Of a stretch of DNA of 55,874 nucleotides, positions 44,359-48,574 are shown one piece after another (within the stretch, counting starts at the first letter, position 1; each line of letters starts with the position of its first letter). The notes beneath the pieces were generated by a model that did not search any database, was not told the origin of the DNA, and was given only the letters and a program-made list of their open reading frames with translations. Origin of the DNA: Aplysia californica (taxonomy: Eukaryota); the NCBI RefSeq assembly GCF_000002075.1, contig NW_004797407.1:50148-106021 (forward strand), written 5' to 3'. The position numbers were made by a program, and so were the translations under genes.

Positions 44359-47300
44359 TCAAGGCGCAGTTTTCCGATCCCAGTTAAGGGCTTTGAGAGG
44401 GCCAATTGCTTCCTGCTCCTCTGCAGACAAAATGTATTTCTCGATCTCACCGTCAAACTCGTTGTCCATCAACTCTGTGCTGTCAAGGTCAACACCGGGT
44501 GGGACTTTTACATCCGTATAAGGAGGTATCTCAATCCTTGGCTTTTTCATACACAAAGGCACTAATACTTCCTTCTCTGAACCAGATGGTCTCTTTTGAG
44601 GAGAATCATTCAACACAGAAGGCGACTTATCATCGCTTACTGATCTGAAAGCCAGGTGCAATAAGCTATTTTGGTACTTCAAAATATCCTCTACATACTG
44701 ATGAAGGTTATGTAGCTTGACACTTTCACTGTCCACCCATGGAAGTCGTTTCGCCAGTTTCAGGAAAAAGGCATTGCATTCTCTGTTCAATTCCAAAGAC
44801 GCAGACGGTAAACTGAATTTTTTCCTGAATGGTTTCATATGTATGAATTTTTCACATTGAGGAGAACTGATGTAGGCGTAGTAGGTTGCTATAGTAATGA
44901 GGCCCTCTCTGCTTCTTCCCTGGGTGAGCCAGGCCTTCCTGCACAAGAACATCACGTCCCGCACTTTACTCACAACACCATTATCAAACCCCTTGCCCGC
45001 TAGACAGAGTCCGATTTGTTTTGTGAAACTTGCGGGCGACACCGGTATTCCCAAGACCTTGATCAGTCTTTTCTTAGCCACCAATAATGTTTTGAACTTC
45101 CTGACGTGCTTGGCAAAGTGCGTCAGGCTCATGGGATAATCATGTCTCCTGGCGACTACAAACAAACACGCTACAGCCAGGTGCTCCTTCAAGAAAACAG
45201 TGGCCATCAAAAATTCTTTTTGAAAATACATTTGTTCAAACATTTCGCCGGCTTCGTCCTTCAGTTCTGAGGGTAACGCAAACTTCTTCACCAAGTCTTG
45301 AATTTTGCTCTGTCCCGCCACTAATCCGGCTCTTTTCTTCGACCTCTCTGAAAACCACGGCAACGTCTGGGTTCCGTTCCCATAAGACCTGGTCGTCATG
45401 TCAAAACTGTCATGGGTCAGCTCTATGCTTTCCACCACAGAGCCACAGTCTTGGCACACCAGCTTCTCCTCCACACCAATGACATTGTAATGTAAATTAG
45501 AGCCCCCGCACGACTTACACGACAGTTTTACCACCTGTGCCGCTGTCGGGTCAGACTCTGGGGGCACAAACACCGCCTGGTTTTGTTCTTCTTCATTCCT
45601 CATGCTGGAATCTTTCTCAAAAGGGGCACACTCTGAGCATATTCGTGATTGGGCTCCGAACTCGAGATCTTCCCCACAAGATTCGCACACAACAGTCTCT
45701 AGACACAATGGGCTCTCTTGACTGTCCACCTGAGAAATGAGAAGAAGTAAAAACGTCAACAATTCAAGTACTGAGAGCTTTGTGTGATAAAAAAAAGCGC
45801 AACCCGACATTACCAAACTGTCACCTGCCTAAAGCAAGGAAAAAGGAATCAAGAAAGACAGAGATAAAACGAAGGAGAAATGGTCAACTATTTTTTTGAT
45901 TTTCAAAGAAAAGTATTTTTATAAATTGAACTATTCCAGCCCAAATGCCTTAACATTTGATGTATTTCTTCAAAGACATTAATTAAAAAAACAAAAACAC
46001 ATGGTTTCTATAGAATTTCTCAAAAGCAATCATGCTTGAAGCAACATCAGTTTTTCCGAATGACAATCTTCATCGATGAATATAGAGGACATGTGAAAAA
46101 CAAAAGTGCTTGTGAAAAAAGTTGAAAAGGTTTTCAGAATCCCTGTTATATGAATTTTGAAAATCATAGTCACTCATACACATGATGAAATTTGATTCTT
46201 ATTTGCTTAAATTTTGAAAAGCAAAAAAGGATTGCTTTTACAGGCTTAGTTTACAGAGAAAAATAGAGACTAAAACAAGTCAGATAAAAGGGTAACCACA
46301 AGTCAACATCTATTTCACAGGAAGCGAAGCATGCTTTAAGTGGTGTCTGTGGCCTAGTGGTTAGGCTACAGTACCTGACTCGTAATCGTGAGGTTGCGGG
46401 TTCGGGGGTTTGAGCCCTGGGCCCGACGTTGTGTCCCTGGGAAAGGCACTTTACAAAAATTTTCCTCACTTCACCCAGGTAGGAATGGGTATCCAGCCAT
46501 AGACAGCGAAAGATTTTGTCAGTTTGTTAGAGTTTTAGCACCTATAATGGCCGCTTGCACTGTATGCTTCCCAGGAAATTGAGCTTGTTTCAGAATGCTC
46601 TCAGGACTGCTGGGGTAAAAGTATTGATTGTGAAGTGCATAGAGCTTGCTGTTGAGTGGGGATTTGCACTATACAAAAGCTGTCTATTATTATTATTGTT
46701 TTCAGTACAAACAGCCAAAAGCTAAGAATCACTACTTCATCAGTGATATCCACTTTTTTTTCTGCACATGTCCTTATCTCTTTGAGCCCTAGCGACAGGT
46801 CCACTGGTGGCACATAAAACTGCCCGTATGTCTAGCCACCTGTACACTGGTGGCACATAAAACTGCCCGTATATCTAGCCACCGGTACACTGGTGGCACA
46901 TAAAACTGCCCGTATGTCTAGCCACCGGTACACTGGTGTTGCATAAAACTGCCCGTATGTCTAGCCACCGGTACACCGGTGAGCAAGACCCCACCCCAAA
47001 CTGGCTCGTCTGAAAAAAAAATGCGTTAGGAAAACAGTGTTTACAACACAAGACTTTACTGATTATTTTGAAAATCTTTCTGAATTAGATGCTGGTAATG
47101 ACAAGGACTACCCTGAGTGGGATATGAAACAAGATTCTAACAATCACATGAAAGTAATATATTGCTCAGGAAGAGGGGCACGGTAGCCCCAGGAAGTCAG
47201 GGCTCAAAGGGTCAAGGCACAGTGTGACGCTAATAATGGCCCCGGCCTGATGAAGGGTAACAAAACCAACCTTTATTTATATTTTATTTAGTAGAGGTTT

Positions 47301-48574
47301 TACAGTGCTCGTAACTGTATAAAGTCATATGAGCGCCAAGGGGTGGATGTCAACAGAGAAGTCTTTACAGGGAATCAGGCTTACTCTGCTCACCTCTCTA
47401 CCTTTAACAGCACAAAGCCTGTTTTGACTTTCAAAGCACCCCGGAAATAGCGGGTCACAAGAGTGTGACAAACATACAAAAGAAGTAGAGGAAAATGACG
47501 ATAGCAAAGATTAGGAAAGAAAAAGCAGCAGTTCCCTGTTGTAGTTCATGCACAGTTATGAGCATGACATTGTTGAATCAGCCCATTTACAATTCTACTG
47601 CGCATAAAAATGAAGAATGTCCCCCCTTTGGGAATGGCCTAAAGACACTTCAGTCAGAAACCAACCTTTACCACAGACTACCTCCTGTGGTAGAATAACA
47701 ATATGTACAAACACCAATGCTCAGATCTATTTCTTTGAGTAAAAGACTCCGCCATAAGCTGTAGGCCCTATTGAAAAGAGATGCATTATAACAGAATTTC
47801 AAAGCAATCACGCTTGAAACAAAACCTGTTTTTCAAAATGGCAATCTACCTCGATGAATGAAGGCCACTGAGCAGTCGAGATCATGTACACTTACAAGAA
47901 GTCAATTTTTGTGTACCACTTCAGCCTTCTTACCTTTCTTCTCTCTTATTTGCCACTTCCAAATATATCACTTTTTCCATTCAAGTAAAACACACACTCA
48001 CAGCATCAGTAGCAAGGAAACTGCAGAGCTTCATAAATGGATGTTTAAGAAGGATAGTGGGGATCAAGTGGTGCGATCAAGCCACAAAGGCTCAACTGTG
48101 GGAAAGAACAAGCCAAAGGCCAGGTAAAGGAAGACAAACAGGTGAAGAAATGGAAATGGATTGGGCACAGACAGGCTTTGACATGAAATTCACAAGGAAA
48201 GCGTAAGAAAGGAAGACCAAAGATGACATGGAGGCGAGCGGTAAAAGCGGAAACGGAAAAGGCGAGGACATCATGGAAACAGCTAGAAAAAGATGAACAG
48301 GTCAGGCTTGAAATGTTGTTGATGGCCTATGCTCAACTGACTGGGAATTACAAGGGGCAAGAGAGAGAGAGAAAACACACACACACAAATCTCTTTGATA
48401 AAAAAAAACAACAAACAACAAACCAAAAGCTAGAGCCCTTACATTGTTTGTTTCTTTGTTCTGCCTGTCGGCAACAGACCCACACTCAATACAGATCTTC
48501 TGGGTCCCTCCACCGTCAATGCTGTCTTCAATGACCGCGGCCTCACCACAGAAACTACACACCTCCAGAGACAT
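44359..48574 (-). CDS. BRF2: TFIIIB 50 kDa subunit (TFIIB-related factor 2); coding exons 48574-48443 and 45729-44359 (1503 nt, 500 aa)
   Basis: TFIIB-type zinc ribbon (LVCQDCGSVV), two cyclin-fold repeats (AVACLFVVARR; AWLTQGR..LITIATY), LPWV, molecular-pin-like LVPLCMKKP and TBP-anchor-like DGEIEKYIL. Length fits BRF2 rather than BRF1. Phase-0 intron AAT|GTAAGG ... tttctcag|GTG. An acceptor 4 nt upstream of the ATG implies a non-coding first exon. Confidence 0.88.
46340..46697 (+). mobile_element. Diverged full-length copy of the CORE-type SINE in the BRF2 intron
   Basis: A/B boxes, body and (TAT)n tail align to 21296-21633. Confidence 0.75.
46778..47211. mobile_element. Decayed piggyBac-like MITE containing a 43-bp minisatellite
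   Basis: ttat CTCTTTGAGCCCT ... AGGGCTCAAAGGG tcaa. Confidence 0.55.
46802..46980. repeat. Minisatellite, ~4 x 43 bp
   Basis: Unit cactggtggcacataaaactgcccgtatgtctagccaccggta starts at 46802, 46845, 46888 and 46931. Confidence 0.9.
47276..47657 (-). mobile_element. Family B retroposon, slightly 5'-truncated
   Basis: 13-bp TSD aaaccaaccttta (47263-47275, 47658-47670). Confidence 0.85.
48058..48350 (+). mobile_element. Second, more decayed RTE LINE 3' end in the BRF2 intron
   Basis: Aligns to the reverse complement of 25628-25955 (KKWKWIG, GKRKKGRPKMTWRRAV). Confidence 0.8.

What the first reader, a model, noticed from the sequence alone, without database searches (positions are those of the whole stretch)
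45445..48574. BRF2 with three tandem zinc ribbons instead of one
Seen: the spliced N-terminus has CSFC-x18-CIEC (aa 6-31, on its own exon, with VIEDS and CGSV), CESC-x12-CSEC (aa 59-78) and CKSC-x17-CQDC (aa 115-139, LVCQDCGSVVE); all 12 Cys are intact in an open frame. An in-frame Met87 (ATG 45603-45601) between ribbons 2 and 3 would give a conventional one-ribbon protein. Established: TFIIB, BRF1 and BRF2 carry a single N-terminal ribbon that docks on the polymerase. Ribbons 1 and 3 both resemble the human BRF2 ribbon (LVEDS..LVCSDCGCVV, from recall). Inference: internal domain multiplication giving a Pol III initiation factor extra docking or redox-sensitive modules, possibly switchable by start-site choice. 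This is the strongest novelty candidate in the window.
Basis: partly seen in the sequence, partly recalled or inferred. Interest (0 to 1): 0.75.

Follow-up and report, generated by a model that had tools for sequence, protein, structure and literature searches.

The report
Snail BRF2 with extra zinc ribbons
The sea hare's only detectable BRF2 gene, a core factor that brings RNA polymerase III to U6-type genes, encodes two polymerase-docking-type zinc ribbons plus a short third zinc module; other higher snails share extra ribbons, but abalone, a pearl oyster and the non-mollusc animals checked do not, and what they do is untested.

Summary
On the minus strand, a 44-codon exon (ATG at 48574) is spliced to a 456-codon exon (45729-44362). 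The junction appears in spliced contigs of two runs from two studies. NCBI's 500-aa Aplysia californica "transcription factor IIIB 50 kDa subunit" is the same model.

Pfam, PDB sequence matches and a fold search all place the protein in BRF2. All 12 Cys are present.

Modules 1 (aa 6-31) and 3 (aa 115-139) are TFIIB/BRF-type ribbons. They score 37.9 and 30.0 bits against a profile of 90 single-ribbon BRF2 ribbons, where Cys-fixed shuffles score about 2. AlphaFold2 gives each three strands. Module 2 (aa 59-78) is a short four-Cys module found only in heterobranch-type sequences, and its ribbon ancestry is not shown.

The architecture is not unique to Aplysia:
- Five named heterobranchs have three modules.
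- Four named caenogastropods have two.
- Haliotis, Pinctada, Lingula, Ridgeia, three hemichordates and amphioxus have one.

Among heterobranchs, ribbon 1 is better conserved (56% identity) than ribbon 3 or the cyclin core (45% each); the linkers are at 12-15%.

Module 3 is the canonical docking ribbon. The role of the extra modules is inferred only. The Met87 start-switch idea has no support. Six literature searches found no description of this architecture.

The parts
48443..48578 (-). Exon A: 4 nt of 5' UTR after an acceptor AG (48580-48579), then ATG at 48574 and 44 codons (MSLEV...KETNN).
48482..48559 (-). Module 1 (aa 6-31): CSFC-x18-CIEC, a TFIIB/BRF-type zinc ribbon.
   Evidence: Pfam PF08271 reaches only 15.6 bits (cut-off 29). 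A custom profile of 90 single-ribbon BRF2 ribbons gives 37.9 bits against 1.7 +/- 3.3 for Cys-fixed shuffles, with 0 of 100 shuffles reaching the observed score. hhalign of the heterobranch module-1 alignment against canonical ribbons gives 96.6%, E 5.6e-10. AF2 places strands at 14-19, 23-28 and 34-35, with pLDDT about 81.
45730..48442 (-). Intron of 2713 nt, GT..AG. It contains a 43-bp x 4.5 tandem repeat (46789-46981) and interspersed repeats.
44359..45729 (-). Exon B: 456 codons plus stop.
   Evidence: PF21886 scores 36.9 bits (cut-off 27) and PF00382 scores 27.6 bits (cut-off 23.6).
45628..45687 (-). Module 2 (aa 59-78): CESC-x12-CSEC, a short four-Cys module seen only in heterobranch-type sequences.
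   Evidence: Its 4 Cys are invariant in 7 of 7. HMM score is 10.7 bits against shuffles at 1.8 +/- 2.8. hhalign against any ribbon set gives 17% probability or less. The heterobranch module-2 rows form their own clade at 98/94. AF2 pLDDT is 67-89, with no three-stranded sheet and a helix at 79-83.
45601..45603 (-). In-frame Met87 codon in the acidic linker.
   Evidence: It is not conserved.
45445..45519 (-). Module 3 (aa 115-139): CKSC-x17-CQDC, the canonical ribbon.
   Evidence: It aligns to human BRF2 from residue 6 onward (8ity_V, E 9.9e-17). HMM score is 30.0 bits. hhalign gives 96.4% against single ribbons and 97.3% against the last ribbon of caenogastropods. AF2 places strands at 123-128, 131-136 and 142-143, with pLDDT 87-92.
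44632..45333 (-). Two cyclin-like repeats (aa 177-410).
   Evidence: AF2 pLDDT above 90, and Foldseek best match to human Brf2 in Pol III pre-initiation complexes (8iue_V, E 6.2e-15).
44362..44631 (-). C-terminal region (aa 411-500). It carries an LVPLCMKK motif (Cys437) and a terminal helix.
   Evidence: The A2 profile aligns human ...LLLPPCMLK... at this motif.

Best explanation
This is the single detectable BRF2 (TFIIIB 50 kDa subunit) gene of Aplysia californica.

Shown:
- Its mRNA joins a small first coding exon to one large exon.
- The protein starts with a complete TFIIB/BRF-type zinc ribbon (module 1). An acidic, disordered linker follows, then a short four-Cys module (module 2), a second acidic linker, and the canonical ribbon (module 3).
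- Extra ribbons occur in both caenogastropods (two ribbons) and heterobranchs (two ribbons plus module 2). They were not seen in an abalone, a pearl oyster or the non-mollusc animals checked.
- The extra ribbon is under purifying selection at least as strong as that on the canonical ribbon.

Inferred mechanism:
- Module 1 still looks like a canonical docking ribbon after long divergence. It most likely still recognises the same polymerase surface and acts as a tethered second docking module, either for capture and hand-over or as a decoy competitor. It sits on a 73-113-aa acidic leash.
- Module 2 is probably a small structural zinc module that stiffens or marks the leash in heterobranchs.

The confidence of 0.8 is for the shown part. 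I put the specific role proposed for module 1 at about 0.3.
For: Identity as BRF2:
- PF21886 and PF00382 score above their cut-offs.
- Human BRF2 is the best PDB sequence match (profile search 1.7e-107) and the best fold match.
- Only one locus was found in the window's own genome.

Splicing: spliced contigs in 2 of 2 contig runs laid, from two studies. The database protein P0001 is 500 aa, 100% identical to exon B over its whole length and begins with exon A's 44 aa.

Ribbon identity of modules 1 and 3. The Littorina protein P0016 likewise folds with two three-stranded ribbons (pLDDT 88-92) separated by a disordered stretch at 37-98.

Distribution:
- Of the 150 listed BRF2-like representatives, 14 have two or more modules, 90 have one and 46 have none (mostly N-terminally short).
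- Every named protein with two or more modules is a heterobranch or a caenogastropod.
- Named single-ribbon forms are Haliotis (3 species), Pinctada, Lingula, Ridgeia, Saccoglossus, Glandiceps, Ptychodera and Branchiostoma.

Selection: mean pairwise identity among 5 heterobranchs is 0.56 for module 1, 0.43 for module 2, 0.45 for module 3 and 0.45 for the cyclin core, against 0.12 and 0.15 for the linkers.

Leash: 73-113 aa between the first and last module in 13 of 13 proteins, with D+E 17-29% and K+R 3-9%.

Canonical role of module 3: only module 3 is followed by the conserved reader/linker that aligns to human BRF2. A single Zn ribbon/B-reader/B-linker of Brf2 docks at a conserved Pol III site (PMC11696126, passages read).
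Against: - No raw RNA read covered the exons (X21 and X22). The two contig runs are only guessed to be RNA. The splice evidence therefore rests on two assembled contigs plus the database model.
- The 5' UTR exon was not located, so an upstream in-frame start cannot be excluded from the DNA alone.
- Pfam's own TFIIB ribbon model is below cut-off for both module 1 (15.6 bits) and module 3 (14.3 bits).
- The first ribbons of heterobranchs and caenogastropods resemble each other only weakly (hhalign 11.8%), and the ribbon tree is unresolved. One origin versus two independent duplications is undecided.
- Gene models of the other snails are predictions that I could not check against their DNA.
- Nothing here tests binding. 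The proposed role of module 1 is inference from retained sequence character only.
Confidence: 0.8

Rival explanations
1. Module 1 has been re-used for a new partner. The partner could be SNAPc, another Pol III subunit, TBP or the BRF2 core itself, or nucleic acid. On this view module 1 no longer contacts the docking site, and the extra modules form an adaptor arm rather than a second docking ribbon.
For: A long flexible acidic tether suits reaching a distant site. The first ribbons of the two snail clades have drifted apart from each other (hhalign 11.8%). That is compatible with adaptation to lineage-specific partners.
Against: Both first-ribbon sets still match the canonical single-ribbon profile as well as the canonical ribbons do. 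hhalign scores are 53.7 and 52.8 against 52.3 and 52.8. In 4 of 5 heterobranchs module 1 scores higher than module 3.
Confidence: 0.3
2. Initiation at Met87, or skipping of exon A, yields a conventional one-ribbon BRF2, and the cell toggles between the two forms.
For: Met87 is in frame and has A at -3. A Met lies at or next to that alignment column in 3 of 5 heterobranchs.
Against: Two of 5 heterobranchs have no Met there. Met1 also has A at -3. Two out-of-frame ATGs, one created by the splice itself, lie between Met1 and Met87. Both spliced contigs contain exon A. Modules 1 and 2 are too well conserved to be optional leader sequence.
Confidence: 0.07
3. Modules 1 and 2 are functionless leftovers of a duplication, or an annotation artefact in which a neighbouring exon was wrongly attached.
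For: The linkers are poorly conserved and predicted disordered. Raw RNA reads gave no coverage.
Against: The junction is seen in two runs. All 12 Cys are kept. Module 1 is 56% identical across heterobranchs, against 12-15% for the adjacent linkers. Similar multi-module N-termini appear in nine named species annotated by different groups.
Confidence: 0.04
4. Module 1 is the working docking ribbon in heterobranchs, and module 3 is a retained structural relic.
For: Module 1 is the better conserved and the more canonical-looking of the two in 4 of 5 heterobranchs.
Against: The conserved reader/linker that must follow the docking ribbon follows module 3 only. Module 3 is the closest match to the last ribbon of caenogastropods (97.3%).
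Confidence: 0.06

Closest known systems
Human BRF2 (TFIIIB 50 kDa subunit; PDB 8ity, 8iue, 4roc, 5n9g)
   Same: Ribbon, reader/linker, two cyclin repeats including the BRF2-specific C-terminal cyclin repeat (PF21886), and C-terminal motifs. It is the best sequence match and the best fold match. Aplysia Cys437 lies in a P-x-C-M-K-K motif that the A2 profile aligns with human ...PPCMLK....
   Different: Human BRF2 starts about 5 residues before its single ribbon. The Aplysia protein carries about 110 extra N-terminal residues with a second full ribbon and a short four-Cys module.
BRF1 and TFIIB (one N-terminal ribbon, B-reader, B-linker, two cyclin repeats)
   Same: The same domain order from module 3 onward. 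The A2 profile hits TFIIB (5.2e-31) and yeast Brf1 (3.4e-25).
   Different: PF21886 and the closer PDB matches place this protein in BRF2, not BRF1 or TFIIB. I did not survey ribbon numbers in BRF1 or TFIIB families.
Caenogastropod BRF2 (Littorina, Pomacea, Babylonia, Batillaria database models)
   Same: An extra N-terminal TFIIB-type ribbon on an acidic 73-113-aa leash ahead of the canonical ribbon.
   Different: They have no module 2. Their first ribbon is only weakly similar to the heterobranch module 1. One unnamed relative, P0015, has a third ribbon that looks like a recent copy of its last one.
Polymerase subunits with two zinc ribbons on a linker (Rpb9, C11, A12.2; from recall, not tested here)
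   Same: Two ribbons joined by a flexible linker that contact RNA polymerase.
   Different: They are an unrelated family with a different role (cleavage and fidelity). No sequence relationship was tested.

Membership tests
BRF2 (TFIIIB 50 kDa subunit) | BRF2-like C-terminal cyclin repeat (PF21886) and TFIIB cyclin repeat (PF00382) above Pfam cut-offs | tested here: met
   36.9 bits (cut-off 27) and 27.6 bits (cut-off 23.6).
BRF2 (TFIIIB 50 kDa subunit) | Closest solved relatives are BRF2 rather than BRF1 or TFIIB | tested here: met
   8ity_V at 9.9e-17 against TFIIB at 0.18 or weaker. Profile search gives 1.7e-107 against 5.2e-31. The top 8 Foldseek matches are all human Brf2.
BRF2 (TFIIIB 50 kDa subunit) | Zinc ribbon directly followed by reader/linker and the cyclin core | tested here: met
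   Module 3 aligns to human residues 6 onward, continuously into the cyclin repeats. Pfam PF08271 itself is below cut-off (14.3 against 29).
BRF2 (TFIIIB 50 kDa subunit) | A single N-terminal ribbon, as in all described members | tested here: not met
   Two TFIIB-type ribbons plus a four-Cys module. This is the deviation that makes it a variant, not grounds to exclude it from the family.
BRF2 (TFIIIB 50 kDa subunit) | Recruits Pol III to SNAPc-dependent type 3 promoters with TBP and Bdp1 | not testable with these tools
   No biochemical or binding data are available here.
TFIIB-type zinc ribbon (PF08271): module 1 | CxxC-x15-20-CxxC with canonical non-Cys residues and a three-stranded sheet | tested here: met
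   37.9 bits against a profile of 90 BRF2 ribbons, with 0 of 100 Cys-fixed shuffles as high. hhalign 96.6%. Three strands in AF2. Pfam's curated cut-off is not reached (15.6 against 29).
TFIIB-type zinc ribbon (PF08271): module 2 | Sequence similarity to TFIIB/BRF ribbons beyond the four Cys | tested here: not met
   hhalign gives 4.0% against single ribbons and 17% or less against every set. HMM scores are 7.8-16.9 bits in the five named heterobranchs and not above shuffles in P0006, P0009 and P0010.
Zinc-binding module (any): modules 1-3 | Binds one Zn through four Cys | not testable with these tools
   Only Cys conservation and confident compact models are available. AF2 does not model metal.

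The most novel reading that the evidence does not exclude
Higher snails run Pol III type-3 initiation with a BRF2 that carries two functional polymerase-docking ribbons on one chain. The upstream ribbon, on an acidic leash, captures or holds Pol III, or blocks the dock as a built-in decoy, and hands over to the canonical ribbon. That would be the first TFIIB-family factor with a tethered second docking module, and a natural experiment on how ribbon-dock affinity sets initiation or re-initiation rate.
Probability: 0.3. Interest if true: 0.75.

Novelty: new variant of a known kind. Interest (0 to 1): 0.5.

Why it matters
In every form I found described, TFIIB-family factors (TFIIB, BRF1, BRF2, archaeal TFB) have one ribbon that docks on the polymerase. 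That ribbon-dock contact is central to recruitment and promoter opening. Here a large animal clade has kept a second, canonical-looking ribbon under strong constraint. This gives a testable handle on whether ribbon number, leash length or intramolecular competition tunes Pol III initiation.

The result also shows that BRF2 is widespread in invertebrates, whereas a key 2015 paper called it vertebrate-only (PMC4671959, summary read).

The practical weight is moderate. The proteins are already in databases. The feature is a domain-architecture variant in non-model animals. No function has been shown.

Tried and rejected
- Raw-read RNA evidence: the two poly(A) raw-read runs (X21, X22) had depth 0-0.44 on the exons, so starts, ends and isoform ratios could not be read.
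I therefore could not see the 5' UTR exon or the gene structures of relatives.
- Ribbon tree: 40 modules and 35 columns. Only the heterobranch module-2 clade (98/94) and a few tips were supported. It cannot order the duplications.
- Orthology of the first ribbons in the two snail clades is unresolved (hhalign 11.8%), despite similar leash length and acidity.
- I considered a retrocopy origin, in which an intronless body carrying its own ribbon lands behind an old ribbon exon. No other mollusc genome was reachable with these tools, so I could not test it.
- Searches with Littorina and Haliotis queries added only 2 unnamed caenogastropod-like proteins and one more Haliotis species. Patellogastropods, neritimorphs, cephalopods and chitons were not identified among named hits, so the exact node of origin is open.
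- A C-terminal 97-aa piece searched alone found no PDB match. The profile search was needed to place the Cys437 motif.
- Literature: searches found no paper describing a multi-ribbon BRF2 or TFIIB-family factor. The library lacks most subscription journals. I did not open the supplements of PMC11696126 (its ribbon-interface figure is supplementary) or of PMC4671959.
- The search of earlier findings returned nothing that bears on this locus.

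
Full report
**What is in the sequence**

The gene lies on the minus strand. Exon A begins at 48578, after an acceptor AG at 48580-48579. Its ATG is at 48574, and it encodes 44 residues that end at a GT donor (AAT|gtaagg). Exon B starts at 45729, after ttctcag, in phase 0. It stays open for 456 codons to the stop at 44361-44359.

- CSFC-x18-CIEC, aa 6-31
- CESC-x12-CSEC, aa 59-78
- CKSC-x17-CQDC, aa 115-139

Met87 is at 45603-45601.

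**Is the upstream exon used?**

I laid four runs on 44000-49900. One contig of X7 (1582 nt, depth 130.2) and one of X12 (1825 nt, depth 7.9) come from two studies. Both carry a joint that removes 2713 bases with GT..AG ends on the minus strand (intron 45730-48442).

The two raw-read poly(A) runs (X21, X22) had depth 0-0.44 on the exons and are uninformative. The contig runs are only guessed to be RNA. However, the own-genome search found a single BRF2 locus, so an intron-less contig is best explained as mRNA.

A protein search with exon B alone returned P0001, a 500-aa 'transcription factor IIIB 50 kDa subunit [Aplysia californica]'. It is 100% identical and its sequence equals exon A followed by exon B. 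I searched them apart and afterwards used the database protein by its id.

**What the gene is**

- Exon B scores above Pfam's cut-offs for the BRF2-like C-terminal cyclin repeat (PF21886, 36.9 bits) and the TFIIB repeat (PF00382, 27.6 bits).
- The best solved relative is human BRF2 (8ity_V, E 9.9e-17), aligned from exon-B residue 70 (module 3) to human residue 6 and onward through both cyclin repeats.
- An AlphaFold2 model has mean pLDDT 81.6. Its eight best Foldseek matches are all human Brf2 chains, the best being 8iue_V at E 6.2e-15.

**What the three modules are**

I built a profile from the ribbons of 90 single-ribbon BRF2-like proteins and scored every module. As a control I used 100 shuffles per module that keep the Cys in place.

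| Aplysia module | Score (bits) |
|---|---|
| Module 1 | 37.9 |
| Module 3 | 30.0 |
| Module 2 | 10.7 |
| Cys-fixed shuffles | about 1.7 +/- 3.4 |

Profile-profile comparison gave these results against canonical ribbons:
- Heterobranch module 1: 96.6% probability
- Heterobranch module 3: 96.4%
- Caenogastropod first ribbons: 96.5%
- Caenogastropod last ribbons: 96.5%
- Module 2: never above 17% against any set

In the model, modules 1 and 3 each have three strands (14-19/23-28/34-35 and 123-128/131-136/142-143). This matches the S1-S3 strands described for the Brf2 ribbon (PMC11696126, passages read). Module 2 is compact (pLDDT 67-89) but has no such sheet. The linkers at 37-53, 86-109 and 148-167 fall below pLDDT 50.

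The accurate description is therefore two TFIIB-type ribbons plus one short four-Cys module.

**How widespread it is**

A profile search of 1.84 billion representatives gave 433 hits at E <= 0.001, of which 150 were listed. Counting CxxC...CxxC modules in the first 260 residues of those 150 gives:

| Modules | Proteins |
|---|---|
| 3 | 3 |
| 2 | 11 |
| 1 | 90 |
| 0 | 46 (mostly N-terminally short) |

Named proteins with three modules are Aplysia, Plakobranchus, Physella, Lymnaea and Bradybaena, all Heterobranchia. Named proteins with two are Batillaria, Babylonia, Pomacea and Littorina, all Caenogastropoda. I checked the lineages of Aplysia, Plakobranchus, Batillaria and Pomacea with the taxonomy tool; the placement of the other five genera is from my own knowledge.

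Five unnamed heterobranch-like ORFs (P0002, P0004, P0006, P0009, P0010) show modules 2 and 3 only. P0002, P0006 and P0010 begin with sequence unlike any relative just upstream of module 2; P0004 and P0009 simply start there. This is what a single-exon ORF call would give if module 1 sits on a separate exon there too.

Named single-ribbon proteins are Haliotis (three species, Vetigastropoda), Pinctada, Lingula, Ridgeia, Saccoglossus, Glandiceps, Ptychodera and Branchiostoma.

A Littorina model folds with two confident ribbons (pLDDT 88-92) and a disordered stretch at 37-98 between them. One unnamed caenogastropod-like protein (P0015) has a middle ribbon very like its last one, so duplication has recurred.

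**Selection**

Mean pairwise identity among the five named heterobranchs:

| Segment | Identity |
|---|---|
| Module 1 | 0.56 (0.50 without the Cys columns) |
| Module 2 | 0.43 |
| Module 3 | 0.45 |
| Cyclin core | 0.45 |
| Linker 1 | 0.12 |
| Linker 2 | 0.15 |

The linkers also vary widely in length. The stretch between the first and last module is 73-113 aa and net acidic in 13 of 13 multi-ribbon proteins examined.

**History**

The canonical (last) ribbons of the two clades match best (97.3%). The first ribbons of the two clades match each other poorly (11.8%). The 35-column tree resolves only the module-2 clade. A single duplication before the caenogastropod-heterobranch split and two independent duplications both remain possible.

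**Mechanism**

Shown: only module 3 is followed by the conserved reader/linker.

Established: one Brf2 ribbon/reader/linker docks at a conserved Pol III site (PMC11696126).

Inferred: module 3 does the canonical job. Module 1 keeps canonical ribbon character, so it most likely still recognises the dock and works as a tethered second docking or decoy module. I put this at about 0.3. Re-use for another partner is about equally likely.

The Met87 switch lacks support. A Met at or next to that alignment column is present in 3 of 5 heterobranchs and absent in 2. Two out-of-frame ATGs lie between Met1 and Met87, one of them made by the splice itself.

The known redox sensor of human Brf2 is C361 in the C-terminal pin, not the ribbon (PMC4671959, passages read).

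**Novelty**

Six full-text searches found no description of a multi-ribbon BRF2 or TFIIB-family factor. The proteins themselves are already in public databases under routine names. I did not open supplementary files of the two papers read. I rate this a new variant of a known kind, of moderate interest.

Noticed in passing
window 44441-44443 (Cys437 codon, minus strand): Aplysia BRF2 has Cys437 in an LVPLCMKK motif. The A2 profile aligns human ...LLLPPCMLK... at this motif, and that human stretch holds the redox-sensing C361 of the molecular pin (numbering from recall of the paper's residue name). Only 12 of 80 aligned BRF2-like proteins have Cys at this column. Most other snails have Ser or Ala.
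   Followed up: partly
database-wide: Clear BRF2-like proteins, some carrying PF21886, occur in molluscs, a brachiopod, an annelid, hemichordates and amphioxus. The 2015 Brf2 structure paper's summary says Brf2 is 'found only in vertebrates' (PMC4671959).
   Followed up: partly
window 46789-46981: A 43-bp tandem repeat of 4.5 copies at 92% match, inside the BRF2 intron.
   Followed up: no
window 46364-46757, 47152-47742, 49319-49515: Interspersed repeats in and beside the intron, with very high summed contig depth and many partly fitting RNA reads. Loose ends run into poly(A) at 47481 and 47495, so these look like transcribed retroelement or SINE-like copies. ARAGORN finds no tRNA gene there.
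   Followed up: no
window 47325-47507 (-) and 34995-35150 (+): The small ORF in the BRF2 intron (...SCDPLFPGCFESQNRLCAV...IPCKDFSVDIHPLALI) closely resembles the start of the 422-aa ORF at 34995-36263. The same repeat family therefore sits at both places. The rest of that 422-aa Ser-rich ORF is unexplained.
   Followed up: no
window 1559-2569 (+): A 336-aa open frame with GDIH...GDMLNKGP...GNHE motifs that look, by eye, like a metallophosphoesterase. It was not scanned.
   Followed up: no
window 45248 and 44409: Contigs of X7 and X12 both read G for C at 45248, and X12 reads T for C at 44409. Both sites are inside exon B and are probably strain polymorphisms. The coding effect was not worked out.
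   Followed up: no
protein P0015 (unnamed, ENA contig): A caenogastropod-like BRF2 with three TFIIB-type ribbons. The middle one is nearly a copy of the last (…NLVHD…TEQ.VCEDC…), which indicates a recent further duplication.
   Followed up: partly
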